From contig BDGG01000002.1 of assembly GCA_001949185.1 (NCBI GenBank), forward strand, positions 248,001 to 312,000: a stretch of DNA of 64,000 nucleotides, read 5' to 3'. This DNA is from Ramazzottius varieornatus (lineage: Eukaryota > Animalia > Tardigrada). This document shows positions 1-61,686 of the stretch, in pieces (position 1 is the stretch's first letter; every line of letters starts with the position of its first letter). The notes beneath the pieces were generated by a model. That model was not told the DNA's origin. It saw only the letters and a list, made by a program, of their open reading frames with translations, and searched no databases. Made by a program: the position numbers and the translations under genes.

Positions 1-2894
1 CGGATGAAGAACTAGCCGTTACCGTACCAACTTGCGCACCGGACTGGCATGTGTAAATGAAGAGGTTGTAAGCTGACTGTGCGAACTGAGGTGGGGAACA
101 CGAGCTGCTCGACGGAGAGGACGGTGAGGGTGAATTGAATGTAGGAGCCAAAGTGGACTGACAGTTGGCTGACACTGTGATGGTGGCAGATGAAGTACCA
201 CCACAGTTATTGGCCGCAGTCACCGTCACGGTTTGTGTCGGGGTGGAGGAAGAAAAGCCGGAGCCGACCGTCACTTGCCCAGTCTGTGAGTTGATGGACA
301 AGGCTTGGCTGTTGAGCGAATAGGAGCTGGTACCCGTGGCTTGAACAGTGCCTACGGATGTCCCCGCTGTGCAGGAGGAGATGAAAAAGTTATAGAAAGT
401 TTGGCTGAACTGTGGCGATGTACAAACTTGCTGGGGTTGGGACTGTCCAAGACAAGAAGGGTTGATGAAGACGATGGCGGAAGCCATGCCGCATTGGCTA
501 CTAGCCATCACCGTCAGTTGGTTGCTGTTGTTGTCGGTCAGTTGGGTCGTCAGGGTAATCTGGCCGGATTGTGGGTTAATGCTGACGGCTGGACTACCTT
601 GGATGGAGTAACTGACTGAAGTACCACCCGTTACCGAAACCGACCCCACGAAGGAGCCAGCAGAGCACTGTGTGATGGAGAACTGGTAAGCTGACTGGAC
701 GAACTGCGGTGGTGTGCACTGCGGTGTTTGGCTGATCGGTTGCGGTTGTGGTTGGGGAGCCGGAAGGCTGAAGACATTAGCTGCTGGCGGAGGCTGGGAG
801 AAGGGCTGCGGGATGGACTGGATGACGGGGAAAGGTTGTGGCTGGGGCTGAGGTTGGTAGACTGGTTGGAGGATGGGTGCTGACGGCGGAGCAAAGATCG
901 GTGGAGCGACGGGGGAAGGTGGCGGCTGGTAGTAAGTGGGACGGGGAATACCGCTGCTACTGCCACCGTATCCTCCTCCTGCCACGGCCGGTACAGCCGG
1001 AGCTGCGTAGGAGGGAGCGGGAAGTGGAGCTGATGGTGCGCCGTACCCTCCAGCGCCATAGGCAGGCGCAGGCGCGGGAGCCTGGATGACTGGCGTGCCG
1101 TATCCACCACCATACGACGGCACTGGTGCTGCAGCGGGCGGGGGAGGTGCTCCATAACTGCCAGCCCCACCATAAGAAGGGGATGGCATCGCTGCTAGGG
1201 CCGATGGGGCACCATATCCTCCACCATAGGACGTAGCCGGAGCTGGGGCTGAAGGGACAGCGTAACCACCTCCATAGGAGGGAGCTGGCAGGGGAGCTGG
1301 CATGGGAGCTGGTATCGGAGCTGCTGCTGCGCCATAACTTGCTCCTCCCCCTCCATAGCTGGGCATTGGTGCAGCAAGCGATGGAGCAGCGTAGCCCCCT
1401 CCAGCGCCGTATGAGGGAGGCGGCACTGGGGCTGAAGGAGCACCATAAGCGCCGTAGGTAGGAGCGGGGACGGAAGGCTGAGCTGGAGCGCCGTAACCTC
1501 CTCCACCACCGTAACTGGGACTGGGTGAAGGAGCAGCTGAACCATAGCCACCAGCACCACCAGCCGAAGGTGTCGGGCCGTAGCCAACCTGCGATGGAGA
1601 AGCCAGTGCCAGAATGCCGAAAACGCCACTGGGAGGTGCTACGCTCTGAGCGCCGTAGCCTCCTGACGCTGCAGCTGCACTACCGTAACCTCCAGCGGAT
1701 GGCGCAGCGGGAGAAGAAGCGTAGCCTGGGGAAGACCCGTATGACGGTGCAGCAGACGAAGAGCCATAACCTCCACCACCGATGGAAGGTACTGAGCCGT
1801 AAGAAGGCGCGGCCGGCGACGAACCGTAATCAGACGCACTGCTACCGTAACCGCCACTGGAAGTCCCAGCACCACTTCCAGAAAATATCGAAGAGGGCAG
1901 TATGTTGACTCGTACTGTACTGTCGCAATACTACAAATGAATGTCAATAGGACAAGATTCTCATTCTGCCCTTCGGACAATACGTTGATTGACTTTACAA
2001 GCTGAACAATTACTCTTGACTTTGAGGCATGCTTTCCATATTGATATTCTGACTTTTTTTACTCTCTGGTGGTTACCCAACGAGGAAAGAGGAAAGCCAT
2101 CTTTGGAACTTACCAGGCGTGACCCGCTGGTCTGAGTGGCGCGTACCCGGAACTCGACGGCGGAGCGCGTATACTTTCTTTGGAGGGAGTTGGAGACGGT
2201 AACGTCACCGGTGACGGGGTTTATTGTGAAGCGTTGAAAGGCAGTGTCTTGGATAGAATACTGTAGGGATGAATTGGTGGGGTCGACAGCGGCTACCTTC
2301 AGGACGAAGCTGCCTGGTGTCAGTGTGTCGGATATGACGGCTGTGTATAATGGTTGAGCACAAACAGGCACATTCCTCGCCAACAACTGCCGACCTTGAG
2401 GTAACTACAAAGGGATCAAACGTCACGTATGGCGTTGTAATCCTTCCAGACGCTACTTTTTATTGGGCGTCTTTGAGCTTGTCTTTCACAGATTCAGGCG
2501 TTGCAAATTTGAAAGCAGTTGAGAACCCGGCAAACTCGACAGTATCACTCTTTTCCAGGGACGCACGCTTCCAGCCAAGAATACCGTAAACATGTGCCAC
2601 TTTGAAAAACAGTCAAAATCTCCAAGCTCGTCTCTCCAAGCCTAGTTCTCACTTGTTGAAAATAACGTACAAAAAGAAGTAAGGCCTTCAGTTCCAAAAT
2701 CGTCTCAGAAAGAACTTGAATTTCCTACTATCGCACACTTTCGGAGCCAAGAGCTAGGTTTGAATTTGGCCTGGCTGAATGATCGACTACATGTTCGCAG
2801 ATTAAAACAATTGCCTTACCAGTTTGGTCGAGCGACATGTTGAGCAAATGTATAGGAGGATGAATATGGGAAAGAAAGGTCTTAGACGTATCAT
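1..2894 (-). CDS. Secreted cadherin-like repeat protein with a long Gly/Tyr/Ala/Pro/Ser low-complexity region (partial; runs off the window start)
   Basis: Exons 2894-2820 (MIRLRPFFPIFILLYICSTCRSTKL, signal-peptide-like), 2404-2114 (cadherin repeat PVCAQPLYTAVISD...FTINPVTGDVTV...VRATQ) and 1930-<1. All joins are GT-AG and in phase. The last exon gives YCDSTVRVNIL, then GGYG/APSYG repeats, then short PxF..Y.F..C..G..VG.V cadherin-like repeats. The ORF track misses the main frame because it has no stop inside the window. Confidence 0.8.
2531..2620. repeat. N27 palindromic element (1 unit), intron 1 of the cadherin-like gene
   Basis: CAAACTCGAC...CCAGGGACGCA-N27-TGTGCCACTTT. Confidence 0.7.
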
Positions 2895-4132: not shown

Positions 4133-7100
4133 TCAGGCCTCGCTGGACTGTTGGTAGGCTTGTCGTACGATGGCGCCCTCAAAGTCTTGGGGGAGAGTGT
4201 CGCTGCCGTACAGCTTCCACTTGTACGTCTGAAAGAGCGGTAACCACTTGCATATACCACTCTTCCCTGCTAATCATCTGTTGACAAAAGACCCTTACCG
4301 TAAAGCGGTCAATGCCGAAGGATGGTACAGTCAGGTGGAAGACCACTACTTCCATCCAGGCGTTATCGGTATTCAGTGCACTGTCCAAGTAGCCGCGGTA
4401 CAACTCACCCAGTGTCAGCGCCTGCGCCCCAAAGTTCTCCATGATCTTGGCCAGTCTACCTCTCAGAATATCCATCATTGTCTAGCAAATTACACAGAAC
4501 AGTCAATCAATTGTACTCTGCTGATAGGCACTATCTTCCGTCAAACTCTTTACATCACTCATCATTGGCATCGACGTGACGTCTTCCACGTCCAGGTCCG
4601 TCTCGTTCAGCGTCGTCGTGTCGTACAGGAAGGCATCCAAAAGTAAGCACGCCACTGCGTATTCCGATTCATGGTGACCCAAGAATCGCTACAACATATT
4701 GGCCATGCTTTGAATTGGGGACCTCGATGAACAACCTCAACCAGGTCCTTTCATAAGTGGCGCATCCTATACTGTACAGTGTATACTGCCGACCTGCCTT
4801 TTGGAGCATGCCACTATTCTCCTCTTTAGCCTTTGAGCTGTTTACCTGTGGCAAAGTGGCGTCGCTGGTGGGCGTTCGTTGGACAATGTAACGGAAGCCA
4901 GCTGCGGAGGAGTTGGTGATGAGGAGGTAGACCTTGTGGTTGGGGCCGAAACGCGGCATACCACCGCGACCCCGAAGACCAGTACGACCGAAAGGGTTTC
5001 TGCAGAGAGAAAAGTATCTTGATGGAGTAGGCTCTTTACTACAAGATAGTGTATACAGCGACAAGGTGGTTAAAGTCAGTTGGACTGACAGTGGGTTGCC
5101 GTTAGAGTCGACGTTGTATGAGACAGCTTGGCCATCTTGGGTGGTGATCCAGCAGCGACGGCCTCGGGAGCGGCCTGATACTGAGCGCAAGTCCGACTCA
5201 GAGTCCACCCAAGGCGATTCCTCCCCGCTGAATTCTCCGGCAGCCTTGTTGTAAACCTCCGGCCGGTAATCGTCCAGCGAATCCTACAACACAGCCAGTT
5301 TCTACCGCTGGAAATGGTTTGGAGCGAAACACTTTTCTAATCCAAAACTTCACCATGAGTTTGGCCTGGGTTTACCTGCCAGTCCACTCGATCGTCGGGG
5401 ACGTACAGTCGAGAGATGGCTGTTGCCGGGTAGGGTGAGGCACGCGACTGTTTATGTGGATAAGGCTGCGCCACTTCCGACACACTTCTCAGCCCTAAAC
5501 ACAATATTCCTTCCTCATTTTCCCCCTGATTTTCACCATCAATATCCACCACCTTTCCGAAGGCATGGGTACGTACGATTGCTTTTCATCTGGGCGGCAT
5601 CTTGAGCTGTCCTCCCTGTCTGCCGGGTGTATTCTTCCACATCCATCATCTTCCGGTCAGCGGCCGTCAGTTTCTTGGCCAGAAGCGCCAAATCGGCCTG
5701 AATCTCCGTCAAGCTAATAGCAACATGCAGTAATTCGTCGGTCCCCTGTCTTTCAAGATACCAATGTTTTTCTTACGTTTTGACTTGCTGTTGAGGGACT
5801 TTGGGCGCTTCGGCTTCCTGTTCCTTGCCGCGGAAGTAGTCGAGAGCTACACCCTTCCAGAAAGTGTACGTGTCCCATTCGATGGCTTCACGGCTGACTC
5901 CTTTGTTCGTCAGTCCTGACTGCAAACACAAGACATGGACAGACACTATCAAGACCTTTTACGTCTAAAGAAAATAAGCTTTTTCCTTACTCCCAGTCTG
6001 GGCGTTTTGCGCTCAAAGATGAGTCTGTAGATGTAGCCTAAAGCGTAAAAGGGTGGCGGCATGCTGGTACGATTGGCGTAGTCCATCACCACGCGAGCTC
6101 GATGATACTTCCAAACCAGGTTGGCCTGCGCAGCTTGCTGCAGTTGTCGGTACCTGAAAACAACACCGTATTTCAAGCTTACTCTATTATGGCATAGTTT
6201 TCATCCACCTTTCTGGCTTGCTTTTGACCAGTCTAGCCTTACACGTAGAAGGCGCTCAGCAGGTTGGAAAGGCCCAGTTTCAGCAAGACGTAGTACTGGA
6301 TGACGAAGAAGTAGGACCAGAAGCTGACGGTGGGACAGCTGTAGTCGTCGTACTCGCCCGTCCAGCATCGCTCAGGCGGAATACCGTCAGCTCGACCACT
6401 GCGATCAGTGTGCCGCCACGGCGCCGACAAGCCTTTAGTCCTCTGCCGTTCGCAGCCTGGCGTACTGCAAAACAGACAAATTGAGACTAGTACTTGCAGC
6501 TCTCCGCTACCGATATTAGGTAAGAAACGACGGTATACGGTTTCACTCCGATCGCTATCCCAACCGGCGGACGTCTACCGTGGTGTAGGCTGAAAGCGTG
6601 CACCACTTCAAAACAAAATGACCTTGCAAAGTGGCGCACGGTTACAGAGGTATTGGCTGAGAGCGTGCGTCACTTGGAAAATTCTTGTAGGTAGATCGAT
6701 CCTATACATCAGCCAAATGGCCTCCACGGAAGTCACACGGTCAAGTCTGGTTCAGTCCTACCTGCAAGACTTCCCATAACTCATTCCAATAATCCAACGG
6801 ACTACTTACTATTCGAGTTCGTTGGGGAAGCCAGCAAAGATGGTGAAAACCCCGCGGTACCAGGCGTGGCGCCAGTCGTCGCCCGTCAACGGCCAGTCCG
6901 GCGTTATGACGCCTTGGAAGATGAGCGTTGTAGCAATCTACAAATACCGACAGAGCAGAAGAAGCTTTGAGCGTTGCCGTCTTTGCCGGTTGGCTTCTTT
7001 CTTTTCGCGAGCGAGCAGGAAAAGAAACAAGTCATCGAGGATGCTTACCATGAAAGGAGCCAGCAGCACCAGCCAGCGGGCCAGGTCGTCGCAGAACATC

Positions 7101-10100
7101 TGGCCGACAATGCGGATCACCGGCCCGAAGGTCTTCTCCATGTAGTAGAAGAAGCTCCACACCCGATAACAGTAGTACAGAATACCTGCAAGAGAAGGTC
7201 ACGCAGTGTAAAACCGGTTTGGTTATCGGATATGGACAACATATTTTGCTACGTTTTCTTCATAAATGAGGTGAGTATAGTAAAGACAGGGAAGTTTCCC
7301 AAGAATTATTTACCGAAGGCCAGAATGACACGCCCGGCGAAGGGGTGATCGTATCGATACGGAGCGATGCGGTACAAGAAGAAGAGAATGTTGAAGAGCG
7401 TCTGCGATATCAGATCGTAGCTGCGCTCGACCCAGAAGATCTTTCGGTAATGCCGCTGATCGTACAGCGTCCTAAAGAGAAAAAAATGTCATTGATAAAC
7501 AGTCCTAATCGTTTTGACCGCATGGCCCTTCGGCAAGGAGACTGGACGGAATTCTTCTGCCAAGTGGCGCGCGTTTCCAGCTCATAACACCAGAGTTATG
7601 CGCCACTTGGGACGAGGGTCAAAGTCGACAGCATCGCTTCCCCCCAAGTAGCGCAGGCTTTCGGCCAATAACAACGCAGATATGCGCCACTTGGGAAAGC
7701 AATCGTGTCCAGTTTGCTTTCCATAAGGAGAGGCTCACCGGGTGACGATGTCGGACCAAATGCTGATGGTGATGACAAAGACGGCGATGTCGACGCCGAT
7801 GAAGCGGCAGGGGGGCAGCATGATGTCGACGCAGATGAGGATGATGAACATCCAGTAGAAGAGATGCCAGGCGTAGAAGCGCACCACCGGTGCGGACCAG
7901 ACGGCGTGGATCATTTGCCCCAGAGGCGGTCTCTGTTGAGACATGGTTGTGTTTTCCGCGTCAGCGCCACCTGTCTGGTAGCGTTTCACCTTGGCCAACA
8001 CCCGGTTGATGTCTTCTTCCGTCCGAGGACGCAAAACACCCTCTGAAATTGGCCGATAAAAATAGGATCACAGTTTCATGTGATGACCGCAACGGCTCGA
8101 CCAGATGAGAGATAGTCGCGACTCTCGAGCTTGCTGGCTATAGTTACCTTTGGCTGGGTCGTCGATGGGGGCAGTAGTGGGCTGTCGCAGTAGCGGGAAG
8201 CTCAGCCATATGTACATGGGGAAGACCAAGACGGCCGAAAGAAAGAGCTTCAGGCTATCGTAGTTGCCCTTCACCCTGATGAAGTTGGAGTAGTACTGGT
8301 CGAGCCAACCCTGCACACTGCCATGCGCTACGAAACCTCTGCAGAGAAAGATAGCCAGTCAACAAATTTCACTTCGAATTTTGCACATACTGGCATCAAG
8401 AGCTCGGCAAACAAGCTTGACAAAATCGCTGTCTCTCCTCAAGTGGCGCACGTTTGCCTTGTTAAGGGCTGGAAATATGCGCCACTTGGAAAAGCAATCT
8501 TGCCTAGTTTGATCCTTTTCCCAAGCGGCGCACTTTTCAGTGTTATTGACTGGACCGCTTGGAAGACGATCGTGTCGAGTTTGTTTGGTTAGGTCCCAGC
8601 TCGAAAACTTCCACAGCGATTCGAACAACAGTCATTGGACTAGCTTGGCTAGCATGTCGTACTTGTTGTTGGTGTCATAGGCCAGTTCCAGTGGCGTCTT
8701 GTCGTTAAAGTCCGGGAAGCGTTGGGTGAGGATGACGGGTCCCCGTTGCCCGGACTTCTGGACACCCTTGTCGAAAATGTCCACCGCCACTTTAGCCAGG
8801 TCATTGGCGATGTTTTTGAGACCTACGCCAGTAGCTGCATTGCTGACTCGTTTGTACAACCCGTGGAACAGCGACTCGGCAAAGAGGGCTTGCGGCAACG
8901 GCTCCGCATGATGCTTGATCAGCGTCTTGACCATCTTGGGACGGTTGAACAAAACGGCGTGGACAATCAAGGCATTCATAGCCTACAACGAAAACCCCAC
9001 AGTTACTGTACTGTCTGGACGACCACTCGGCAAGATCGTTGTACCAAGTGGCGCACACTCACAGCTAATAACAGTGGATCCGTGCGCCACTTGGGAGATC
9101 AACTCGACAAGATAGCTTTCCGAGTGGCGCATTCTTTCAGCTGGTAAGTTAACACGGTAAAGGTGCGCCGCCTGCGAAAACTATCTTTGGCCAGTTTGTT
9201 TGCCAAGCTTCATAATTTGACTCAAGATTCCGTAACCAGTGAGACTACCTTCTTTTCCTCCGTAGCATTGTTGAAGTCCTCCGTCTGGCCGTAGGCGGCA
9301 GCCGTCAGTCCGTAAGCATCGATGTAGTTGCGGACACCGGTTAATTCTTTAATGAGCCAGTTGAGTCCGCTGGTGATGAAATCCGGTCCCACAGGCTCGA
9401 CTGCACATGACAAATTCAAAAAAATTTGGTCTGACGCTCGAGTTAAGCATAGCACTGATGGCAGACAGAAAGAAAGATACATAGATACAGTCACGGTCAT
9501 GGGTCATGGGCACCCCTTCAAACTTTCACTTTTTTCGGTATACACCGCGATCCTCTGGACGGAATCACATTATTGTTTCTTCTCCTAACCGGCAAAACAC
9601 TACTCTTCAAACTGCAGAGACAATGAAAGTAAATCTCAAAGTAAAACAAACGTTGTATTTCGGCGACCCAAAAGACACCGGAATTCTCAATGTCCACCGA
9701 TACGGTAATCCTGGATTCAAAAATTAATAACTTGGTGTCCACAAGACTGTTCAATGTAAATTTTTTTACATAAACCACAGGTTTCGTTACGTGTTCTGAC
9801 GTGTTTGAACCAACAAGATCTTCTGTTCTGAACCTTAGAAAAAAAAACGTTTCGAAAATGTCTTCCTCCAGATCTGAGCACGCCCTTCAAATTCGAGAAC
9901 TTGTCATCAGACATCATTCAAATCGCGTCGGAGCGAGTGCAATAGCTCGCCGGGTATGTCTTCCACGGACTACAGTCCAGAATATGATCAAGAAGTTCGA
10001 GATGACGGGATCAGCGGAAGTGAAGCGACGACCGGGACCAACTCGGAAGACCACTGCCCTCATTGATCGGATTATCGTGCGCAAGGCAAAGTAAGATCGA

Positions 10101-13100
10101 CGTATTTCTGCTGTTAAAATCCAAGCCCAAATCATGACCGAACATTCCGTTGACATTTCGGAGTCCACAGTCAAACGCCGGATCAACGAGCAAGGTATGT
10201 TTGGAAGGGTGGCCCGTAAAAAACCGTTCGTCAACTACGCTAGCAGAATGAAGCGTCTAAACTTTGTCAAGATGTACGTAAAGGAACCGCAGTCGTTTTG
10301 GAATAACGTCTTGTGGTCAGATGAGACCAAAATAAACCTCTTTGGTTCAGATGGAATGGTTCGAGTTTGGAGAAAGCCGGGTGAGGAATATGCGCCAGTT
10401 TGCACGGTACCGACTGTGAAGCATGGTGGTGGTCGGCTGATTTTCTGGGGATGTTCCAGCGCTAGAGGAGTGGGAAATCTCGTTGTGATAAAAGGAAATA
10501 TAGATGGCCTCATGTATCGAAACATTATGGACCAGAACGTGCTTCAGTCGGCGAAGAAATTGAAGTTGAAGAAGGGGTGGCACTACCAGCAGGACAACGA
10601 TTCGAAGCATACTTCAATCGTTTCTCGGGACTGGATAATCGAAAAGAAGATCAAAATCTTGCAGTGGGCACCCTACTCACCAGACCTTAACCCAATAGAG
10701 CACTTATGGTCGGAAGTCGAACGCCAGCTGAAAGGAAGGCATCCTTCGAACCTGGAAGAACTGGAGGAAACCGTCAAGGAAATCTGGTACGGAATGGACC
10801 CCGAAATATGCGCAAAGTTAGTTCGTTCCATTCCGAACCGGCTTCGAAAGGTAAAGAAGAACCGTGGCTACCCAACGAAATACTAAGAAGCCAGCGCGTA
10901 ACGAGAAAAACGTGGGAAACAAATTTTCGTCTGAAGGTGATGCGATTTGTAGCTGGTGAATTTTGGGCACAATTAGGAAAAATATTTTCCTCGCTTTTCT
11001 AAGTTATCCTTTCTGATCTGAATTATCATTAGTAGATGGGTAAAGCTTCGAACCAGATGTACATAAAATTGGAAACGAATCGGAGTGACCGTTGACGAGC
11101 TTTACCAGAAATAGGGAAAGTTTACGAGGGTGCCCATGATCCATGACCGTGACTGTAGTTGAAAAGACCAACCGATGCTGTATCGCATGATGCCTTCCCA
11201 GACATGTTCGGGAAAGAACTGACGGTCCTTGGCTTCTCGGAACAGTTTCAGTAACTTCACATCACTGACGTACTTCCGCGTCCGAAAAAGGTGTTGGAGG
11301 TAAATGTCGACGAACATTTCCCGGTTTGGAAGCAACAAAGCCAACTCGAAGACACTTTCCGGCAGCTAAAATTAGTATCTTGTCTTTAAGTAATGACATT
11401 TGGTAAGATTCCACTTGAGGGTGCACTGTAGAACAGAAGGAACAGCGCGGAGAGAGCCTAAGTTGTCCAACCATAATCACGTTTAGAAAAATGTGAATTA
11501 CCTCCATGTCAGACCAGGGTGCCTTGTTCAGCAGCATGTTCAGGGCCACAGTATGGTTGTTGCATTTGACCGCCAAGGACAAGAAATGCTCGAACAAGTC
11601 CGGCGTCGCTTCTGCAAAGTGAAACAAGGCGTGAGTAACTGACAGTAAGGCAGGGATCACATGCTGACGAGTGGCCATAAAAGTCAGCTTACTGGTGCTG
11701 GAGGAGCCGATGACGCTCTTCAGGACGAAACTCTGCAGGTCGCCAAAGTTCTCCATCTGTCGGCAGTTCATGATGGACAACAGCGGTCCTTGTTGGTCGG
11801 GGAAACCCAGCTTCAAAACCTCCATAACGGAATTCAGGCAGTCAACCATCGAGTATTCGTCTTCACGAAGAAAAGGGAAGGCACGCTGGAGCTGCGTTCC
11901 AACGCTGGTTCGGAGACCTGGACCATCCAACTCTGCGCTGTAAAAAAAACGGACATGCGACCAAAACTTTGAACAATCTGCCTTCTCCGGTATTACAGAT
12001 CAAAAGTCCGGTTGCCCCAAGTGGCATACGCTTTCAGTCAATATCGCTGAAAACGTGCGCCACTCGAATGAAAGAATCTCGACGGATCGTTTTGAAAGTA
12101 GCGCACTCTTTCAGCCAAGAACAATGAAAATGCGCCCCACTTGAAGTAACGATCGTCTACGTTTCGTTTGCCATCCCCCAGATTAGTGTCTGTACATACC
12201 TTTCATGGATGGCACTGGACAGAATATTTCCCAGACCACCACAGCCTTCCATGATGACGATGGGAACTTTAGCTTCCAGATAGGCTCTAATGCGATCCAG
12301 GTCGTCCAGCTCGCCCTGGAAGAGAAAAGCCACCATGGGCACTCCCACAAACTTCCGACCTTCTTCCCTGCGGCCTGCAAATGGCACTTGCGATAACGTA
12401 CGGCACAGCATGGCCCCAGAAAACTATCAATGGTAAGAGCCATTTACCGGACGTAGCTCGTCGGTTGAGTTCTTCCTGAACTTCCCTTTCGAAAGCGACC
12501 CGCAGCAAGCTGGACTCCTTGTAGGATTGGCTCTCCATCATGGCGTACAGTGGATGGTAGCCGTCCAGTGGGAATTTTGGTGGAGGCGCGTTGGCACTGC
12601 CGATCGACACTGGTACATCATGCGGATATTCCTGTTGTAATGACACAGGTTGGCCCACAGAAAATTCATATCTTGAATAAAAGGAAACGCATGACGTCTC
12701 AGACCCGTTCGTACTTACAACACGAAACTGGCTACACCCCACAGGCCACAGCCATTGTGATACGTCATACAGTGTACGACAAAACAAATCGTTAAAAATG
12801 GGTGTATGGAGCCAGACGGTTGAAGCCAATAAAATTTTCGCATGCATGAAAAACTAATTTTCATTGGCTGAGTTGTAAGTAAGCTCAGCTGGAGTGTTAC
12901 GCCCATTTCTAACGGGTCAATTTTGTCGTACACTGTACTCAACCTCCACTAGTACGGCCTTTAATAGCGAGTAAGATCAAACGACACACAAAATACTTCT
13001 GTCTTGCACTTACCGTATCTGCTTCGTTGTACCTGAAGAAAGTACAATGTCCGAATCGTATCAGACTACGTCATAATTTTCGTCTAAGAATTAACATTGC

Positions 13101-33805: not shown

Positions 33806-33985
33806 TATGCTCAGATCTCACAAGTTCTTTACAGCGTCACATCGATGCGCTGAAGCTGCCCCAGGCAAAAAGCCTAACGTGTCTATCACATGGACTTGAC
33901 AACACAGGGATGCTAGACGGGTGAAGCGTCCAAAATAATTACGGGTAACAAGAGTCGTTTCCTTCAGGTAGCACTAGTGGAGCTT

Positions 33986-44658: not shown

Positions 44659-45374
44659 TCAAAGAGGTCCACCAGCTTCTCTTCTCTCTCCAGCTGTATC
44701 TCCCCTCATAGCTCTGTATTTTGCCATCTCGTTAGGAAAGCTTCTGGCTAACTCCACCAGAAGGTGAGCTCTGAATTTCTGTAGAGAAAGCAATTTCGTG
44801 ACTTCTACAGACTAACAGTAACAGACTGCGAAAGACAGGGAAACAACTGCATCATCTCGTCAACTTACTTTGAAAGCGTCGATCTTGCCTTTGACTTCTT
44901 CGTTTTTCTGTATGGATTTCTCCATGCAATCTTTGGTGTAACTCTGGGGATTCAAACCTTGATCCACGTACTGGACAACTTCGAAAGGGACGCGGATGTC
45001 GCCCAGAGCGCCTTTGGCATAGTCCAATTCCCTCAGGCCGTTTATCTGTCCATTTCTGCAAAAAATGAAGGGACTCGACAAGATCCTTCTCTTAACTGGC
45101 GCATGTTTGCATTGTAATTGGCTGATAGCGTGCGCAACCTGGTCATACAGTCTTAGTCTAGACGACTTGCTGTTGAGGTTCCATATTTTACTGTTACCCA
45201 CAATCTTTGGTTGATGACAGGTTGGCTGGTGGGTTGTACGTCCGACACAATGATTCCCAGCTCGCGATAACTTTCCATGACGCTTTCCAGCAGTTCCTTG
45301 AAATGGTCCAGTTGATCTCGTCCTGGCTGGTGATTCCCCAGTCCGGCGTTGCTCTGTCCGTAGGTATACTCCAT
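44659..45374 (-). CDS. MED10: Mediator subunit 10, 3 exons
   Basis: RELGIIVSDVQP..Q.VINQRL / VPFEVVQYVDQGLNPQSYTKDCME...VKGKIDAFK / KFRAHLLVELARSFPNEMAKYR. Confidence 0.93.
45072..45165. repeat. N27 element monomer, MED10 intron 1
   Basis: ACTCGACAAGATC..AACTGGCGCA-N27-TGCGCAACCTGG. Confidence 0.75.
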
Positions 45375-52255: not shown

Positions 52256-53911
52256 ATGTCTTTCTTCCGTCGCAACTCCACGAAGCAGTCTTCCGAAGCT
52301 GCGTCAGAACCTCCGTCCCCATTACCAGCTCCCAAACGACTGACGACGCTGTCATCAGCGTCCAACTCCTCTCCACACTCACCGAATTCCAGTTCTGCAT
52401 CTACTGCATCAGCTGATGATAGCGAAAGCGGGTAAGCACAGTTCAGGCAGATATATGAACCCTGGTTCGGGTTCAGGTCTATTTCCGCCAATTTTGTGGG
52501 CTCGCCTCGAAGGACGCAATTGACGTCATGCGGTAGCATATTCTTGATTGCGGTAATCTTACATCATGCGCGACTTCATCGGCTAAGCTTGTCATGCAGC
52601 ATATTTTTGCAGTGCAACGATTTCGCTGGGAGCCGTGGAAGACCCTACCGTTCCTACGCCATGGTCTTTCGCCTTAGACTCGTCTTGGAAAGTATGGTTG
52701 ATGGCTACTCTGGTGCAGTTGTGAATTCTTCAAAGATGATTTCCACGCAATTTTTCTGCAGGAAATGGAAGGACGCATCGAACCCCCTAACGTGCGAGGA
52801 GATCGTCGTGAAGCGGAGGTACGCATAACCGAACGAGACTTTGGCCAAATAATGACGAAATTTCGGGCGCTATTCGCGTTGCAGATGATATTTGGAATCT
52901 AGACAAAAAACTCGGCAAGATCTAATTTGCGTAAGCGGCGCACGTATTCAACCAGTAACACTGAAACATTGCATCTCTCGAAAAAATAAAATCCGACAAG
53001 ATCGGTTTTTCACATGGCGCACTCTGTCATTTGGTAACACTGAAAGCGTGCGCCACTTGGGAAAATTAATGTTGTCGAGCTTGTTCGGCGGGCTACCATC
53101 TGGTTTTCTAACTGTATTCGTTCATCATTGTTAATCTTGGCAGATTGTTCGACCGACCACCGACTGTGGTCCCTACGACGCCAAGATTCTCATCTGCGCC
53201 GACTCGATCGGCAGACCGCTGGAGCTGAAGATCATGGAGATTTGCGGACTGACGGTTTACATCACAGCTTGGGGTGGCAAAACCATTGCCGATGTGCTGG
53301 AAAGGTCAGTCTTCCTTCGCTCCCGAGGTGTCGGAACAAAAGTCCTGGTTCTGATAGCCGGCACCAACGACATCTCCCAGCTGGTCTGCACTAACCCAGC
53401 CAAGTCAGCCTGTCCCACCTCCTGTCAGGAGGCTGCCAAGCAGCTGGTTAACCAGTACAGGTTCTTCCTCAAGCATAACTGTGATCGATATGATGTGGTT
53501 TTTCTCACTGAACTCCTTCCTCAGAAATGGGAGGATGAGGGTAAGCAGGCGTTAGCTACCATGCTGATAGAGTCTTTCAATAAGGAACTGGCCAACTTAG
53601 TGGCCGAGTATGAGTTTATGTTGTCGACCGATGATGAGAAGCGAGATCTTCAAATATTTCTAATTCCTGTCTATGATGAGTTTGATTTCGATGATCTCGA
53701 TGCGCTAAATAACGGCAAGGAGAGTTCCGTCCATCTCAAGTACGTCGGGCTGTCGTCCGAAAGAGCATTCCGCCGAAATCAGGCCGGCGGTGACGTGCAG
53801 AAGCAGAGACATCCCCGGGAAAAGTTTGCCACGGTTATTGGCGAGTTTCTGCAGAAGAAGCTCTGCAGCAATAGTCAGACGTTGGAAAAGAAACAGGACG
53901 AAAGTACATAA
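52256..53911 (+). CDS. Ser/Pro-rich N-terminus plus SGNH/GDSL-hydrolase-like domain, 4 coding exons
   Basis: Four exons (starting about 52256, 52613, 52762 and 53144) join in phase. SGNH blocks: ILICADSIG (I), WGG (II), LIAGTNDI (III), ESSVHL (V). Confidence 0.7.
52908..53083. repeat. N27 element dimer, SGNH-gene intron
   Basis: Both spacers are 27 nt; ends with TTGTCGAGCTTG. Confidence 0.8.
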
Positions 53912-54311: not shown

Positions 54312-56489
54312 ATGGAAAGAGGCATCATTATGTCGAGCTCGTCGGCGTGGTACGAATCCTGGTCTCCTGACGGAAGTGTCTACAACTGCTCATCCCTGAC
54401 CTTCGACGTCGGCTCCATGACCGACCCTAATGCTCAAGATATTCGCGTGGCCGCCGCTTTGGTCAGTAAATTCACTTTCCGTTGTTCGACAACATCTGCT
54501 TTCATATATTGCCTCTCGTTTCAGCCAGAACCGGCGTATCTGATGCGGGAAACCTTCTACGACGAACAAGGTGTCTGCGCTTCGGACGCCAAGGCTCGAC
54601 CTTCCAAAGTCTACTGGGGTGGTGTATGGATCTCCGTTCTTGCCAGAATCTGCCTTACAATAAATGCTCGGTAAGGCCAGCAAGGTCTGCTATGGATTTT
54701 ACTTTCTCTTGATGAAACCAGAATGCCGGATAACTCAGAATACCAGTTCTAAAGATCATAGACATATCGATTCGAAAGGTGCTTCCCGACATCCTATCAC
54801 GTTATTTTTCCATGTTACATATTTATTAAGAGATTAGAAAGAAAGTCATCTGAACGTTATTGACAGGTGTAAAATTTACGAAGCCATCGACCACAACGAC
54901 ACTTCCAACTACGGTGACAGCACGGCTCTGCGCGACGTGATGCAAGACAAGGCTGAAATCGCACTGACGCCACTGCTTATCACGCGAAGCCGATTCGGTT
55001 CCGGCAACTACTCCATCCTGGCCTCGCTAAAGAATAAATCTTACGCTCTAAGTATACAGTGAATATCCACTTAATTCTTGACTGCTTGAACCCTGACGTA
55101 ACCTTTCATGAACATGATATGCTCGTTAGCGTTGGGAGGTCGGCAAATGGCCCGAGCAGGAGCGTTTTCTTAAGTGGCGCACAATCGCGGCCAAAAACAA
55201 TGGGATCGTGCGCCAGATATCGATTATGCTCAATTCCTTTACCAACGACTCATATCTTTTATGTTGTTTAATCCTTAGTCTTGAACAAGAAGTACCTGAC
55301 GTTGGACTCTTCTGGCACCGAGCGGATCGTTGTCGGCAGCTTCACCCCCGACTCATGGCTGGGTATCGTAGCCTGCGTTCTAGTCATGTTCACTACTCTG
55401 TGCCTTTCTCAGAAGCTCCGCGAACTGTATTACAACAAGCATTTCACATGGAAGGAAACCATCAGCGATGTTTTTCAAGGCATCCTCGTCGGAGATTTTC
55501 GTAGGACGTTTTAAACCCCCTCCCTGTATACAAAACTGCTGTGGCAAAACTGAAACGTATTTTCAGCCGACGAAATTTGCGTCATCCGGGACACTCTGCC
55601 ATCGACGGCGACCCTGACAATTCTCTCGCTGATTTTCAGCTTGATCATCGTCAACTACATGAACGCCATTATTCCCTACCAACTAGCAGTCAGCGCCATG
55701 CTGGTTCCCCCCTTCTCCACTCTGCCCAATTTCTTGTCCAACCCGGACTTTGTGGCCTACGGTAACAAAGCCGTCCGCGAATCCATGTTGGTGCGTTTCT
55801 CTTTTGAATCTTGGTATGCCATACTAGAGTTGCCCACAGTTGGCTGCATCGACTGTGTTGTAGGATAGCAAAGACGAGGTGTTGCGTCAGTTCGCTACAA
55901 GGATGAACGCAATCAACAATAGTCAGAACTATTACGAGTTTATGACTCGCAACTCCAGCAGCAAAGAGGTCTACCTGGCACACAAGGAAGGCGAAATCCT
56001 ACTAGCCAACTACTCGTGCGACTTTGTCGAAGCGGTTCCCAACGTCCTGTCCTTGACCATTGCACCTTTGTGGTTCAAACGAGACAGTGACATATATTAC
56101 AAGTTCGCCCCAAGGTCAATTATTCACGAAAGTACAACGGTGACCTTTATTTAGAGCCGTAAATTTCCTTTAACAGGTTTGAAAGGTTGCTGTCGGAAAA
56201 GCTCGTCGATTCAGACCTAGGGTACTACCGCGAATCATCGTACGACGTTTTGCGGAGAGCCAACAAATCCAAGAACCTGTGTATTGCGAAACCCTTGCCG
56301 GGTAACCCGGATCTGGGCAACCGTGGGCTGAATTTGGTCGACTTGACTTTGCCCTTCGTCGGCATCATGCTCGTTAATATCGTGGCTTGTGTAGCCTTGC
56401 TGCTAGAAATTCTTGTTTATCGCTTTTCTCATCGAAGAATTCGGCCCATGACGGATCAAAGTAACTTAGATAGTTTGCACAGGCCATAA
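54312..56489 (+). CDS. Divergent ionotropic receptor (IR/iGluR-like), copy 1
   Basis: S1 AEIALTPLLITRSRF, pre-M1 SFTPDSW, M1, re-entrant segment, M3 IVNYMNAIIPYQLAV, PPFSTL, S2 CDFV, and M4 LNLVDLTLPF..LLLEI. Confidence 0.8.
55150..55245. repeat. N27 element monomer, IR copy 1 intron
   Basis: TAAGTGGCGCA-N27-TGCGCCAGAT. Confidence 0.75.
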
Positions 56490-56871: not shown

Positions 56872-58867
56872 ATGAACCAATCTTCAAGGGACGCTGAAAA
56901 GTGGCTGGAGCTATGGGGGCCTCATTCCAACTCGATCTTCAATTGTTCCACCAATACTTTTGACGTGGGCTGCGCTGACTGCAGTGACATCAGCATTGCA
57001 GTTCCTCAGGTATAACTCTCATTCTAATACGTAGGCGCTGATTACCCTATGAAGGTAAGCTTCTTTTTCGCAGATTGATCCACCGTGGATCCTGAAGACG
57101 ACGTTTCCGCAAGATGAGCCCTGCCGAGAAGGACCGACCAGAGTTTACTATGGAGGAGTTTGGATATATACACTGCAGAAAATCTGCATGGGCCTAAACT
57201 TCAGGTATGTTCTTATAAGACAGCATGGTGTGAGATACCGTTGGCTATGAATGGGAAACTGGGAGTGCGACAAAGATTTTTTCCGAAAGCGGCGCACTTT
57301 CTTGACGCTGCTGGCTAGAATTGTGCGCCAGTTGAATGGGCCATAATGTCATTCTTGATTCTTACCCCAAGTGGCGCACGTTTTCGGTGTTACTGACTAG
57401 TAGCATGCGCCCCTTGGTTCAGACGGTCTTGTTGAGCTTCCTGGGCCCTGGCCAATGTCCCCCGTGAATTTGTGGTTTCAGATGCAAACTGTACGAGCCG
57501 ACCTCGGCGCCTGACCCGTCTCCTTACGGAGACAGCTCGGTATTACGAGACATTGCCATGGGCCAGGCTCAGATGGGCATCCAAATGATGCTCATCACCA
57601 CTTCCAGATTCGCTAGCGGTAACTATTCCCTGATTCCTTCCTATATCGCAAAGAGCTACTCGCTGTTGATTCATAAGCGTCACCTGGTCTCCGACACCGC
57701 TACCGGCTCGCAGCGCATGATCTTCCAAACTTTCTCCCCGACGTCCTGGGCTGGTTTGGGCGTCATGCTGCTAATTATTTTCACTGCACTATCTCTATCG
57801 CAAAAGATGCGTATGTTGAAGTACAGAATCAAAGTTCGCTGGCGTGACATCTGGTTTGACGTTTTCATGGGAGTCCTCAACAATGACTGGCGTAAGACTG
57901 CAATCTCAAAGTCGCAACTGTGTGGCAATGTTGGGTGAAAGGCTCTGTCTTTTCACAGCCGAGCAAATGACGGGCTTCAAGCGAAATTTGGCCTCGTCCA
58001 TCACGCTCATCGTTGTCTCTGTACTATTCTCGCTGGTCGTCGTTACTTTGTTCAACGCCATGTTACCTTTGAAGTTAGCGACCAGTCCTTCGTCAAAACT
58101 TCCCTTCTCCACACTGGACGAGCTGCTGCAGATGGACTACAAAATTTACGGAAGTACGGCACTCAGAGAATCGCTCATGGTAATAAAGGGTGACGATACA
58201 AGTACAGTAGGGAATCAGAAGCGAGGAAACATCAGTGAGGGCCATGTTGCAGGAAAGCAAGAAGGAAGTCATTCAGCAGTTGGCCGCTAAGATGGAGGGT
58301 GTCAGTAACAACGTCGACTATTACGAGTTGGTCGGCAAGGATGCAGCTCCCCGAGCAGTCTACCTGGCCCACAAAGAAGGGCGATCGCTGCTGGCGCTGC
58401 TGCCCACCAACTGCTCCTGCAACTTCATCGAAGCCATTGCCCACGTCCAAGACTATCCCGTGGCACCATTCTGGTTCAAGAACGGCAGTCAGCTGCACAC
58501 CGACTTCAAGCGGCTGTAAGTCGGCTTTTTTCCTGCACCATCGAGACCAGTTAAAAGACTTGTCGATCGATACAGGTTCTACCATCTGGCCACACAAGGC
58601 ATATTCGACGGATCAATCCGATACTTTTCCCATTTCGTCAGCGAGGAACTGGTGCGCAATAACAAGTCCCTCAACTGCCTGCCAAGGCCGCTGCAACGTG
58701 AGACGGCCTTGGGAAATCGAGGTCTGCAGCTAGTTGACCTTTCCCTTCCCTTTATTTGCCTTTGTGGGGTTGAACTGGCTGCATCTGTGATAGCTTGCTT
58801 AGAATACCTCTCGGTAAGAAACGTCTGCATTTTCCGCTCGACAAAAGTCACTCCTTCATCTAGCTAG
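56872..58867 (+). CDS. Divergent ionotropic receptor, copy 2
   Basis: Paralogous exon by exon to copy 1 (TFDVG, YYGGVW, ITTSRF, TFSPTSW, LPFSTL, LQLVDLSLPF). Confidence 0.8.
57265..57437. repeat. N27 element dimer, IR copy 2 intron
   Basis: Both spacers are 27 nt. Confidence 0.8.
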
Positions 58868-58971
58868 CTAGCTGACAAGCAATAAAGTGCAGACCGCTTT
58901 GGGCAGCTGTAGGAATTGTTCTGGATCGCCACCCTCTACGCTCTTTCCGAGGTTTTTTTCATGTTGTTCGA

Positions 58972-61686
58972 ATGCCAGCCAAGTATGAGCAGGATTCAGC
59001 CACTTGGCTTGAATATTGGGGACCTCGCAACGGCTTCTACAACAGCACCAGTGGCACTTTTGACGTCGGTTGCGTCTCTTGTCGCAACGTCCCGGAAGTG
59101 TGGGTTGCAGCACAGGATAGCGTAAGTTTAAGCACCATGTGTCCGTCAAAAGCTTTAACAAACGTGACCTCACTGCATGATATTGGTGTAAGGGCTGCTC
59201 TTTCTCTAGCCCGAGCCTCCTCTGCTACTGCTCAAGACCTTCAACGAGACCGTGACCAACGCGACTGAGAATGACGGGGCAGGAAACACAAGGCGCCACT
59301 ACTACGGAGGCGTATGGATTCTGACTCTGGAGCGAATATGTCTTTCCATGGCCATCCGGTAATACAGTCAGCCTCTCCCAAAAGTCTATTACGTCAGGCA
59401 AGCAAACTTCTTCAACTTTGCCCGCTGCAATAATATATGTAGAAGCTTGCTTGCCTGTCGTAATTGGCTTTTGGGAGAGGTTGACTGGGCTTCTTCATGA
59501 TATGAATACAGGGCTAATCTAGCGCAAGAGGCCGTCTATTTCAGATGTAAAATTTATCCAGCCGTCGAAGGAGTGTACGACACCAGCGAATTTTCCGACA
59601 GTGCGGTGTTACGGGAAATCGTGGCTGGCAAAGGCGATATCGGCCTATCCCCGCTGGTGGCGACCTCTAGCCGTATCTTCTCCGGCAACCATTCGGTGCT
59701 GCTGTCACCCTTCAACTTGTCCTTCTCCATCATCCTCAATAAAAAGTTTCTGTATCGCGATTACTCTAGTTCAGAGAATATTCTGGACGGTATCTTTCAA
59801 CCTGAGGTCTGGCTACTTCTGATGGTTCTGATTTTGCTGATGACAAGCGTCTTGTACCTCTCCCAAAGACTACGCTTTCGCCTCAGCCGCCAAGTCTTCC
59901 CACCGAGAAGTCTTCCCCTCGACACCTTCATGGGTGTCCTGTCGGGCGACTTCCGTAATTTCTACTTCTTCTCTCCTGAGCCGTGCCGGATATAACCGCT
60001 AATTTGATTCTTACAGAGGACCATCTCATTCGGATCAAGGGAAACCTTCCATCGGGTGCGCTCGTGACAACGATGAGCATTATTTGCGGACTGGTGATTG
60101 TCAGTTACTTCAACGCCATCTTGCCCTACCGCCTCGCCGTGGAAGCGCTGACCAAAGCGCCCTTTTCCACTGTCAAGGATTTCCTGCAGTCGGACTTTAC
60201 GATATACAGCTATTTTTCTGTCAAAGAGTCCTTTTTGGTCTGTGTAAATTTTGCAGGACAGGCAAAATGTTGAATATTTAAGAGGGTCTCTCCTGCAGAA
60301 AGCTTCCAGTCCACATTATCAGCAGCTAGGCGCTCGGATTCAACCTCTGAGCAACGCAGTGAACCATCCAGAGTTTATGGCGCGACCCAACTCTGAACGA
60401 GAAGCCTTCATCGCTTATACTGAAAGTCAAATTGTTTTGACCGACTACACCTGTGACTTTGTGCAGGCCGTCCCAAATGTGCAAGGTTTCTCCAACGGTA
60501 TATTCTGGTTCCGCAAGGGTAGTCCGTACTACCTTACGTTCGCGCTACGGTAAGCACCATGCAGGAACAGCACAAGACGTCATACTACAAGATGGTTATT
60601 TGAAGTTGCGCACCCTTGCAGCTCGTAACAACGCAAACGTGCGCCACTTCGGAAAACAAGCATACTGTCGACGGGAACCCTTTTCCAGATGGCGCACGCT
60701 TCCACTCACTCGAAATGCAAGCGTGCGTAGAGATGGGATAAGTGTGATTTACCGAAATTTACCGAAACTGAATCGAACTTATCGATTTGGTATGAGAAAT
60801 GACCGAAACCGGAATTATCGGTGTGAGTCTCACACCCAAGAACCGATATCGGTGTGCGTTCGCACCAAACCGATACCAAATCGAAATTTTTCGATAAATT
60901 GAAACTTACCGAAAGGCCCAGAAACATGAGGGTTTGACCGATTTCTGAGCGATCCCGAGAAAGTTTTCGGCTTACAGACTGTATCTCTGCTAGCTTGATA
61001 GACAGCCATCCGGTGGAGGAAAACCTCCCAACATCTCAAGACACGCCAAGCGTTGTACGTTTGCGGCTCGCCCCGTTTTGCGCCAGTTTTACCTGGTTTT
61101 CCCTTTAATAAGAGGAACTTTATATTTTTCGGCTTACCGATTTTTCGGTTTGATTTGGTGTGATAAATCGAAATTTCGGTGCAGCAATTTACCAAATCAA
61201 AAATATCGGTGTGTGGACTGCATACTGAAATTTTTGAATCGGTGTGAAAGTTTACCAACTCGGAAAATACCACACCGAACTTAATCACACTTATCCCATC
61301 TCTAAGCGTGCGTCATTTGCGGGACGATCGCATGCGTTTCATTTGTCGGCCTCTCGGACGGAACTCTAATTCGGACTGGTTGCAGGTTTTTGCGTTTGGC
61401 GAATCAAGGTGTGCTGTACAACGACATCAAATACTTTGACCAATACATCCGTGACCATTTGACCGATCAGAATAAAACATATGGTTGCGTCCCTCATCCA
61501 CTATCGACAAAGCTACAATTGCCCTTGGTCCGCCGCGGACTGTCGGTCCAGGACTTGGCTCTTCCCTTCAACGCCATCTTGGCGGTGTCTGCAAGTGCCG
61601 TCCTTTTTATGTTTGGTGAGCTTCTTTACTACAAGTGGTCGTGCCGACGAATTGTCCCAGCCCATTCGTCAACAGAAGAAGACTAA
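58972..61686 (+). CDS. Divergent ionotropic receptor, copy 3 (last intron enlarged by a MITE)
   Basis: TFDVGC, YYGGVW, GDIGLSPLVATSSRI, IFQPEVW, SYFNAILPYRL, APFSTV, LSVQDLALPF. Confidence 0.8.
60580..61330. repeat. N27 element dimer, IR copy 3 intron; second unit split by the hAT MITE
   Basis: Removing the MITE and one TSD restores CAGATGGCGCA-N27-TGCGTCATTTG. Confidence 0.8.
60728..61304. mobile_element. Non-autonomous hAT-type MITE (577 bp)
   Basis: Perfect 22-bp TIR TAGAGATGGGATAAGTGTGATT, perfect 8-bp TSD AGCGTGCG (60720-27, 61305-12), and subterminal ACCGAA/TTCGGT arrays. Confidence 0.95.

What the first reader, a model, noticed from the sequence alone, without database searches (positions are those of the whole stretch)
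2531..61330. Dense, intron-confined palindromic element with a rigid 27-nt spacer (AAGTGGCGCA-N27-TGCGCCACTT): candidate undescribed cis-acting system
Seen in the sequence: about 24 clusters (about 40 units, roughly one cluster per 2.7 kb) in the introns of 10 genes, including housekeeping, channel and receptor genes, plus one site outside called genes. No full unit lies in an exon. The by-eye consensus is CAAACTCGACAAGATCGTTTTYCCAAGTGGCGCA-N27-TGCGCCACTTGGRAAAACGATCTTGTCGAGTTTG. Of 37 units counted by hand, 31 have exactly 27 nt between GGCGCA and TGCGCC; the others have 26, 26, 28, 29, 32 and about 42. The spacer sequences are heavily diverged, and the period between tandem units varies freely (66-84 bp). 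No TSD is visible. Inference: a neutrally decaying MITE this old should have accumulated indels in the spacer as it has in the outer linkers. Conserved half-sites 33 bp apart (about 3 helical turns, same DNA face) point to selection on geometry, for example a dimeric DNA-binding protein that marks chromosomes at high density (insulator, holocentromere, pairing or condensin-type site), or a conserved pre-mRNA hairpin. The half-site variants CAGGTGGCGC and CAGATGGCGC resemble the CTCF core AGRKGGCGC, but this is only a resemblance. Caveat: I found units by their half-sites, which inflates their apparent conservation.
Basis: partly seen in the sequence, partly recalled or inferred. Interest (0 to 1): 0.92.

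Follow-up and report, generated by a model that had tools for sequence, protein, structure and literature searches.

The report
Catalogued tardigrade MITE, unusually conserved core
The palindromes are copies of an abundant miniature transposon already listed in the published repeat library of the tardigrade Ramazzottius varieornatus. Its two 10-bp inner half-sites and their 27-bp spacing have decayed three to five times more slowly than the rest of each copy, which suggests that something, probably a DNA-binding protein, still reads them.

Summary
The window has 42 units in 25 clusters, and 27 of 32 half-site pairs lie exactly 27 nt apart. The genome holds about 15,000 units. All six clusters checked against spliced RNA contigs are intronic.

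The element is not undescribed. It is the roughly 125-bp palindromic MITE entered as ramVar1-0, -16 and -23 in the curated R. varieornatus library of Peona et al. 2024 (PMC11071193). Sister subfamilies are ramVar1-6 and ramVar1-7; the latter is labelled Sola. This scan had already reached that identification on other DNA of this genome.

Copies found without using the half-sites show half-site divergence of 0.09, against 0.36 in the adjoining spacer stem and 0.24-0.29 in the arms. The transposon tips have decayed like the arms. Genome-wide, the exact core 12-mer occurs 5283 times, against 342 for the tip, 391 for the arm and 114 for the spacer. Spacer length changes about five times less often per base than the outer arm.

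Arm pairing is not compensated, copies look uniformly old, and I found no close relatives. I therefore favour constraint acting in place on a paired protein-binding module (about 0.5) over purely transposon-level history (about 0.3). No binding protein, cross-species data or polymorphism test could be obtained.

The parts
2530..2614 (.). cluster, 1 unit (left half-site decayed)
   Evidence: nhmmer
4718..4768 (.). partial unit: left arm plus an exact left half-site only
6550..6681 (.). cluster, 2 units
7525..7722 (.). cluster, 2 tandem units
8394..8599 (.). cluster, 2 tandem units with both full outer arms
9017..9208 (.). cluster, 2 units (second spacer 32 nt)
12011..12183 (.). cluster, 2 units
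17373..17549 (.). cluster, 2 units, inside a 261-nt intron (17330-17590) of a minus-strand gene
19015..19106 (.). cluster, 1 unit, inside the 171-nt intron 18981-19151
19601..19765 (.). cluster, 2 units, inside the 268-nt intron 19552-19819
20224..20420 (.). cluster, 2 units, inside the 350-nt intron 20194-20543
21152..21319 (.). cluster, 2 units, inside the 231-nt intron 21088-21318. Arms and spacers are barely recognisable, yet 38 of 40 half-site bases are intact.
22783..22964 (.). cluster, 2 units, in the intron that begins after exon end 22755
30041..30301 (.). cluster, 3 units
33612..33820 (.). cluster, 2 units
36085..36187 (.). cluster, 1 unit
37181..37313 (.). best-preserved unit of the window, plus the remnant of a first unit whose interior is deleted
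   Evidence: 99 bits
37228..37237 (+). example left half-site AAGTGGCGCA
37238..37264 (.). example 27-nt spacer (stem, 9-nt loop, stem)
37265..37274 (+). example right half-site TGCGCCACTT
40554..40748 (.). cluster, 2 units
41419..41538 (.). cluster, 1 unit
45068..45154 (.). cluster, 1 unit
52890..53093 (.). cluster, 2 units
55130..55258 (.). cluster, 1 unit
57272..57446 (.). cluster, 2 units
60587..60727 (.). cluster, 2 units (second truncated)
61303..61356 (.). partial unit

Best explanation
The units are old, immobile copies of a catalogued non-autonomous DNA transposon of Ramazzottius varieornatus. The entries are ramVar1-0, -16 and -23, and the sister subfamily ramVar1-7 is labelled Sola. 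The element is a roughly 125-bp near-perfect palindrome, in effect two terminal inverted repeats of about 58 bp joined over a 9-nt loop. It often occurs as an inherited tandem dimer with a period of about 82 bp. It inserted into short introns and now makes up much of the intronic DNA here.

The 10-11-bp half-sites lie about 40 bp inside each terminus. They are most likely a protein-recognition module that began as the subterminal binding site of the family's transposase. This step is inferred.

What is unusual is that the rest of each copy, including the cleavage tips, has decayed by about 0.3-0.4 substitutions per site, whereas the two half-sites have decayed by only about 0.1 and their 27-bp spacing has rarely changed. 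I read this as constraint acting on the copies where they sit. On this reading a sequence-specific protein, either transposase-derived or a host factor, still binds the pair as a dimer-like unit. Loss of the sites is either selected against or the sites are shielded from mutation. Which protein binds, and what binding achieves, is unknown.
For: Identity: my HMM consensus matches the library entries read. There are 2116 exact 9+9 pairs genome-wide. Units cover 6.0% of the window and 2.7% of 200 kb of evenly spaced genome.

Slower half-site decay: in copies detected with only the outer arms informative (n=27), half-site divergence is 0.091 [0.069-0.112] against 0.357 [0.323-0.397] for the spacer stem. 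With outer arms plus spacer informative (n=66), it is 0.095 against 0.28-0.31. In 97 copies anchored only on an exact outer-arm 12-mer, the exact left half-site occurs in 28 and the right in 30, which implies per-site identity of about 0.885. The neighbouring 8-mer is exact in 9 (about 0.74) and the spacer 9-mer in 2 (about 0.65). Exact 12-mer counts genome-wide are core 5283, tip 342, arm 391 and spacer 114 with a control of 48. Simulated copies with uniform 32% decay, run through the same pipeline, return half-site identity of 0.69-0.73, not 0.88.

Decay happened after insertion and independently in each copy. Arm-to-arm complementarity within copies is 0.83 for half-sites against 0.46-0.50 for spacer stems, and equals the product of the two arms' identities. 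Linkage between variable columns outside the loop is weak. Per-copy divergence is close to binomial and uncorrelated between blocks. Three copies compared with the whole genome have no close relative. The near-identical copies that do exist share their flanks, so they come from duplication of a larger segment. The tips, which the subfamily consensuses conserve, are decayed in the copies.

Spacing: the partner half-site is at exactly 27 nt in 83% of cases, over a 27-nt span. An outer-arm motif is at its modal offset in only 62% of cases, over a 14-nt span.
Against: No binding protein, footprint or expression effect is known. The local sample is only 96 units (264 kb). The genome-wide evidence is k-mer counts and a by-eye tally of 100 listed rows. 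About 30,000 half-sites under selection is a very large target. Half-site mismatch counts are close to binomial; this also fits sites that were all perfect at one time and have since decayed freely. Subfamilies with different outer arms but an identical core exist in the library, so the core was certainly also constrained at the level of the transposon. I could not obtain related species, orthologous sites or polymorphism. My first test for subfamily structure was too conservative by design and counts for little.
Confidence: 0.5

Rival explanations
1. Transposon-level history only. Any copy with intact half-sites at the right spacing could be mobilised in trans. The half-sites were therefore kept by selection for mobility while arms and spacers drifted in the source lineages. 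After the transposase died, all columns decayed equally by about 0.1. There is no host function and no constraint in place.
For: The library holds several subfamilies (ramVar1-0/-16/-23, -6, -7, -20) whose outer arms differ by about a quarter of positions while core and spacer stem stay the same. Half-site mismatches per copy are close to binomial, as expected after a single stop of activity. Terminal and subterminal sites conserved better than interiors are the usual pattern in MITE families (established knowledge of MITEs). Two earlier follow-ups of this scan judged the family ordinary.
Against: Inherited variation should be shared among relatives, but linkage outside the loop is weak and per-copy divergence is not overdispersed. 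No relatives were found for three query copies. The spacer stem and the tips are as invariant as the core among subfamily consensuses, yet they are as decayed as unconstrained arm positions in the copies. A copy with decayed tips should not be mobile. An arm-anchored sample of 97 copies contains no young, near-consensus cohort.
Confidence: 0.3
2. The conserved feature is an RNA hairpin in pre-mRNA. The two half-sites form a GC-rich 10-bp stem in either orientation of the element, and that stem is kept for splicing, editing or small-RNA processing.
For: All tested clusters are intronic and transcribed. Because the pair is palindromic, the same stem forms whichever strand is transcribed. Nine units folded as RNA on the transcribed strand all pair the half-sites, at -16.6 to -30.1 kcal/mol; seven of the nine have z-scores of -2 or lower.
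Against: There is no excess of compensated pairs. Observed complementarity equals the product of the two arms' identities. In the nine transcribed units, 7 half-site changes are wobble-compatible and 9 are disruptive, as chance would give (my tally). A loop length fixed to the base is not expected for a simple hairpin. Rfam gives no hit.
Confidence: 0.07
3. The cause is a mutational cold spot or some other non-selective effect, for example local sequence context, or very short-tract conversion among copies.
For: The slow decay is homogeneous across copies, with no mixture of kept and abandoned sites.
Against: Identity drops from 0.95 to 0.64 between adjacent columns at the inner edge of the half-site. 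A/T and G/C positions of the half-site are equally conserved. The half-site CpG is its best-kept position, while CpGs elsewhere in the element are among the worst. The transition fraction is 0.69 in the half-sites and 0.57 elsewhere, so no unusual mutation spectrum stands out. Conversion tracts of 10 bp are not known (established knowledge).
Confidence: 0.08

Closest known systems
ramVar1-0 / ramVar1-16 / ramVar1-23, curated R. varieornatus repeat library (Peona et al. 2024, Mob DNA, PMC11071193, supplementary file 3)
   Same: The same sequence. These are 113-125-bp palindromes with the same tips, arms, half-sites, 27-nt spacer and loop as the consensus I derived. The curators class them as DNA transposons, complete, TIR 'whole', TSD 'unclear'.
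   Different: The library gives only consensus sequences and a class. The main text has no occurrence of MITE or intron. I found no mention there of dimers or of slower decay of the half-sites.
ramVar1-7 (labelled DNA/Sola; 123 bp, TSD 4 bp, TIR 56 bp) and ramVar1-6, same library
   Same: Same architecture, identical half-sites, spacer stem and 27-nt spacing.
   Different: The outer arms differ at roughly a quarter of positions, symmetrically on both arms. These are minority subfamilies in my sample. It is the only Sola entry in either tardigrade library as stored, so no autonomous Sola partner is on record.
Transposon-borne binding-site families: CTCF sites spread by rodent B2 SINEs, and SETMAR binding to Hsmar1/MADE1 inverted repeats (from my own knowledge, not checked here)
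   Same: A high-copy mobile element carries a protein-binding motif to thousands of places. A transposase-derived or host protein may keep reading them.
   Different: In those cases only a minority of copies is thought to be constrained. Here nearly all detectable copies keep both half-sites at fixed spacing, and the binding protein is unknown.
Bacterial REP/REPIN elements (from my own knowledge)
   Same: Short palindromic units, often in doublets, with conserved stems, variable loops and very high copy number.
   Different: That is a different domain of life, with an HUH-type transposase, and the elements are intergenic. Here the elements are eukaryotic and intronic, with MITE termini.

Membership tests
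MITE (non-autonomous class II transposon) | Short, non-coding, high copy number, dispersed | tested here: met
   125-bp monomer or about 205-bp dimer; 96 units in 264 kb; 2116 exact 9+9 pairs and 5283 exact core 12-mers genome-wide
MITE (non-autonomous class II transposon) | Terminal inverted repeats | tested here: met
   The whole element is a palindrome out to the GGGAGCTCGG tips. The library lists TIR 'whole' or 56 bp.
MITE (non-autonomous class II transposon) | Target-site duplication | tested here: inconclusive
   There is no excess of 2-8-bp direct repeats at 51 element ends, only an A-W-W-T bias before the tip. The library says 'unclear' for ramVar1-0 and 4 bp for ramVar1-7.
MITE (non-autonomous class II transposon) | Autonomous partner sharing the termini | tested here: not met
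   Six hAT loci carry no unit. The Tc1-like element in the window has unrelated TIRs. No autonomous Sola is in the stored library. The search was far from exhaustive.
Published family ramVar1-0/-16/-23 | Sequence identity of the consensus | tested here: met
   Consensus compared by reading.
Sola superfamily | 4-bp TSD and a DDD transposase | tested here: inconclusive
   The 4-bp A/T-rich flank bias fits, but no TSD is demonstrated.
Introner elements | The element creates the intron and supplies or adjoins both splice sites | tested here: not met
   Introns extend tens to about 150 nt beyond the elements. After subtracting the element, their sizes resemble those of element-free introns.
Structured RNA / pre-miRNA-like hairpin | Compensatory base-pair covariation, or an Rfam match | tested here: not met
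   Observed complementarity equals expectation. No Rfam hit. Folding is possible.
CTCF-type insulator site | Match to the CTCF core, a CTCF gene in the genome, and occupancy | not tested
   Only an 8-of-9 resemblance, recalled from memory. The literature places CTCF in the panarthropod ancestor (PMC5094011), but I did not search this genome for it.

The most novel reading that the evidence does not exclude
The roughly 30,000 half-sites carried by this dead MITE are kept by purifying selection as paired binding sites at fixed 27-bp spacing for a sequence-specific protein, perhaps a domesticated transposase. That protein would mark introns throughout a compact tardigrade genome. This would be a transposon-seeded, genome-wide cis-element system in which nearly every copy, not a small subset, is constrained.
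Probability: 0.4. Interest if true: 0.85.

Novelty: new variant of a known kind. Interest (0 to 1): 0.55.

Why it matters
The repeat itself is ordinary and already catalogued. It is RepeatModeler family ramVar1-0 (family number 0) for this genome. What would matter is the pattern inside it. Thousands of transposon copies have lost their tips, arms and hairpin pairing but kept two 10-bp sites at an exact distance. That would be one of the clearest cases of wholesale retention of a transposon-borne binding module, in an animal with a 56-Mb genome where non-coding DNA is scarce.

It gives a concrete, cheap experiment: pull down what binds a 47-bp probe. It also gives a sharp computational test: divergence of half-sites against flanking columns at orthologous copies between strains. 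If that test fails, the family remains a useful example of how selection for mobility can mimic host constraint.

Tried and rejected
Rfam scan of the window: no hit.

Literature search for the half-site strings: only unrelated papers.

Metagenome scan for the exact pair: one hit, a GC-rich bacterial coding region, so a chance match.

hAT as partner: 143 dimerisation-domain hits in the genome, but the six loci fetched carry no unit.

The Tc1-like transposase between two clusters (10134-10886) has its own 55-bp TACAGT-type TIRs and is unrelated.

Near-identical copies as evidence of recent hopping: rejected, because three copies share their flanks on both sides.

TSD search: negative.

My first test for subfamily structure kept the structure in its control and is uninformative. 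Hierarchical clustering returned a single cluster and was dropped in favour of pairwise linkage.

The fetch from genomes stopped after 200 kb, and loci from the genome search after six more.

One paper search was badly posed and gave nothing.

CTCF presence in this genome was not tested.

Full report
**What is there.** The window contains the motif pair far above chance. GGCGCA-N20-45-TGCGCC occurs 16 times against 0.11 expected. The 10-mer half-site with up to one mismatch occurs 64 times against 4.4 expected. When left and right half-sites are found independently, the gap between them is 27 nt in 16 of 19 pairs in the window. It is 27 nt in 27 of 32 pairs at two mismatches, and in 76 of 92 half-site observations over 264 kb. 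A profile search finds 42 non-redundant units in 25 clusters between 2530 and 61356. These cover 6.0% of the window. The assembly gap at 32864-33002 is real. It lies more than 600 nt from any unit and nothing here depends on it.

**Organism and abundance.** The window is C2:248001-312000 of a 55.84-Mb, 200-contig assembly. This fits Ramazzottius varieornatus (55.83 Mb in PMC5531438). A single-exon PSF2 gene in the window has Hypsibius exemplaris as its nearest named homologue at 61% identity. Genome-wide there are 2116 pairs with both 9-mers exact (control 0) and 5283 exact core 12-mers. In 200 kb taken at even steps from two contigs there are 54 units (2.7% of the DNA). Together these imply roughly 15,000 units.

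**Anatomy.** The spacers are not unrelated. They share a consensus that continues the palindrome: a 9-nt stem, a 9-nt asymmetric loop and a 9-nt stem. The palindrome runs outward for about 50 nt on each side to tips beginning GGGAGCTCGG, preceded by an A-W-W-T-biased flank. The monomer is therefore about 125 bp. Of 63 clusters, 32 are single, 29 double and 2 triple. In most doublets the two units are direct repeats. The linker is a short stub plus one outer arm, and its polarity follows the orientation of the loops. The dimer is thus an inherited form with a period of about 82 bp, not two chance insertions.

**Where it lies.** RNA contigs from four studies laid on 17000-22999 show a minus-strand gene with 17 introns. 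All six clusters in the stretch lie in introns of 171, 231, 261, 268 and 350 nt, plus one intron running past the end of the stretch. The element-free introns are 56-111 nt. The elements are insertions into ordinary short introns, and they do not supply the splice sites. I could not check the other clusters against transcripts.

**It is already catalogued.** Two earlier follow-ups of this scan, on other DNA of this genome, had said the palindrome is the core of a 125-bp MITE in a published library. I traced this to Peona et al. 2024 (PMC11071193). Supplementary file 3 holds ramVar1-23 (125 bp), ramVar1-0 and ramVar1-16 (113 bp), which read the same as my consensus. It also holds sister subfamilies ramVar1-6, ramVar1-7 and ramVar1-20.raw, and a copy nested in a hAT consensus. 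The curators list ramVar1-0 as a complete DNA transposon with TIR 'whole' and TSD 'unclear'. They list ramVar1-7 as Sola, 123 bp, with TSD 4 bp and TIR 56 bp. That is the only Sola entry in either tardigrade library as stored, so no autonomous partner is on record. The exact half-site does not occur in the H. exemplaris entries as stored. 'Undescribed' therefore fails. The paper's main text has no occurrence of MITE or intron, and I found no mention there of the element's internal conservation.

I built profiles in which chosen columns were replaced by random letters, so that they carry no information. Copies detected by outer arms alone (n=27) have half-site divergence of 0.091 [0.069-0.112]. 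Their spacer stem, which was also free in that search, is at 0.357 [0.323-0.397]. Copies detected by arms plus spacer (n=66) have half-sites at 0.095 and other blocks at 0.28-0.31. As a genome-wide replicate I listed copies anchored only on an exact outer-arm 12-mer. Of 97 true copies, 28 have an exact left half-site and 30 an exact right one, and 10 have both, as the product predicts. This implies per-site identity of about 0.885. The 8-mer next to the half-site is exact in 9 copies (about 0.74) and the first spacer 9-mer in 2 (about 0.65). This tally was made by eye. Exact 12-mers of equal length from the same consensus occur 5283 times (core), 342 (tip), 391 (arm) and 114 (spacer, control 48). 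Half-sites outnumber termini by only about 1.5 to 1. Simulated copies decayed uniformly by 32% with indels, run through the same pipeline, give half-site identity of 0.69-0.73. The method does not create the effect. Uniform neutral decay is rejected.

**Spacing.** Over the 27-nt spacer, 17% of pairs have changed length. Over a 14-nt stretch of the outer arm, 38% have, as measured by the offset of an independently detected arm motif. That is about 0.007 against 0.034 events per nt. Among the first 100 exact pairs genome-wide, 79 have 27 nt and most of the rest have 26 (my count). The spacing is not rigid, but it is about five times better kept than the arm.

**When did the differences arise?** The subfamily consensuses are near-perfect palindromes, so mismatch between the two arms of one copy measures change since that copy's source.
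- Within copies, half-site pairs are complementary in 0.83 of cases and spacer-stem pairs in 0.46-0.50.
- Both values equal what two independently decaying arms would give, so nothing restores pairing.
- Outside the loop, variable columns are almost unlinked. The loop columns are linked, but that reflects loop orientation.
- Per-copy divergence is close to binomial and uncorrelated between blocks.
- Three copies compared with the whole genome found nothing better than 70-85% identity over short stretches.
- The arm-anchored sample holds no young cohort.
- The few near-identical copies share their flanks on both sides and belong to a larger duplicated segment.
- The tips are conserved among subfamily consensuses and are needed for cleavage in cut-and-paste transposons (established knowledge). 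In the copies they are as decayed as any arm column.

Taken together, this looks like one old, star-like family whose copies have long been immobile. Only the half-sites and their distance have been spared.

**Interpretation.** I conclude that the half-site pair is a protein-recognition module, probably the subterminal binding site of the family's transposase by origin. This is inferred, because it is the part held constant among subfamilies. I further conclude that its persistence in dead copies is best explained by constraint acting in place (confidence about 0.5).

The main rival is pure transposon-level history (about 0.3). Under it, any copy with intact sites could be mobilised in trans, so sites stayed perfect until the transposase was lost and have since decayed by about 0.1. 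It fits the binomial spread of half-site mismatches. It does not fit the lack of shared variants, the lack of relatives, or the decay of tips and spacer stems. An RNA hairpin is possible on energetic grounds: all nine units tested pair their half-sites. It lacks covariation and any wobble preference, so I give it about 0.07. A mutational cold spot is hard to square with the one-column drop in identity at the inner edge of the half-site and the well-kept CpG, so I give it about 0.08. The CTCF likeness is 8 of 9 bases, recalled from memory, and was not tested.

**Limits.** The local sample is small and part of the genome-wide evidence was counted by hand. The decisive tests are a census of all copies against their subfamily consensus, and divergence or polymorphism at orthologous copies.

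**Verdict.** The element is a known MITE.

Noticed in passing
window 9486-11157: A Tc1-like transposon with 55-nt TIRs starting TACAGT (84% complementary) and a 250-aa ORF at 10134-10886 carrying HTH_Tnp_Tc3_2 and DDE_3 domains. It sits between two MITE clusters but is unrelated to them.
   Followed up: partly
window about 50698-50901 (G000:C2:298698-298901): A hAT dimerisation-domain match with one in-frame TGA. A 22-nt inverted repeat at 47918-47939 / 51590-51611 (91%) may mark its ends. The genome has 143 such domain matches.
   Followed up: no
window 46647-46826: A different palindrome: 63-nt arms, 87% complementary, 54 nt apart. It is probably another MITE family.
   Followed up: no
G000:C1, about 7.2-8.9 Mb: Exact tip 12-mers of the MITE are about four times denser in the last 1.7 Mb listed for contig C1 (30 of 63 hits). 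Exact arm 12-mers also crowd above 6 Mb. This means either more copies or better-kept copies there.
   Followed up: no
G000:C1:584809-585007, C1:5688727-5688925, C17:732999-733197: Three nearly identical copies of a segment that contains a nested MITE copy and shares flanks on both sides. It is a larger repeat or a segmental duplication.
   Followed up: partly
window 17000-22999, run X19: One RNA data set under the same species label differs from the assembly by about 1-3% (35 listed differences, mostly in exons). It comes from a diverged strain or population that could serve for a constraint test.
   Followed up: no
window 14566-15228: An apparently single-exon GINS PSF2 gene (220 aa). The nearest named homologues are Hypsibius exemplaris at 61% and Paramacrobiotus metropolitanus at 53%.
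   Followed up: partly
window 20224-20420, 30041-30301, 33612-33820: Within these arrays one unit seems to have its loop in the opposite orientation to its neighbours. This could be decay that blurs the call, or an inversion between the inverted half-sites.
   Followed up: no
G000:C24:3966-4086 and 15250-15370; C22:15991-16111: Three MITE copies with identical BLAST scores on two small contigs, two of them 11.3 kb apart. This hints at a long tandem or duplicated unit.
   Followed up: no
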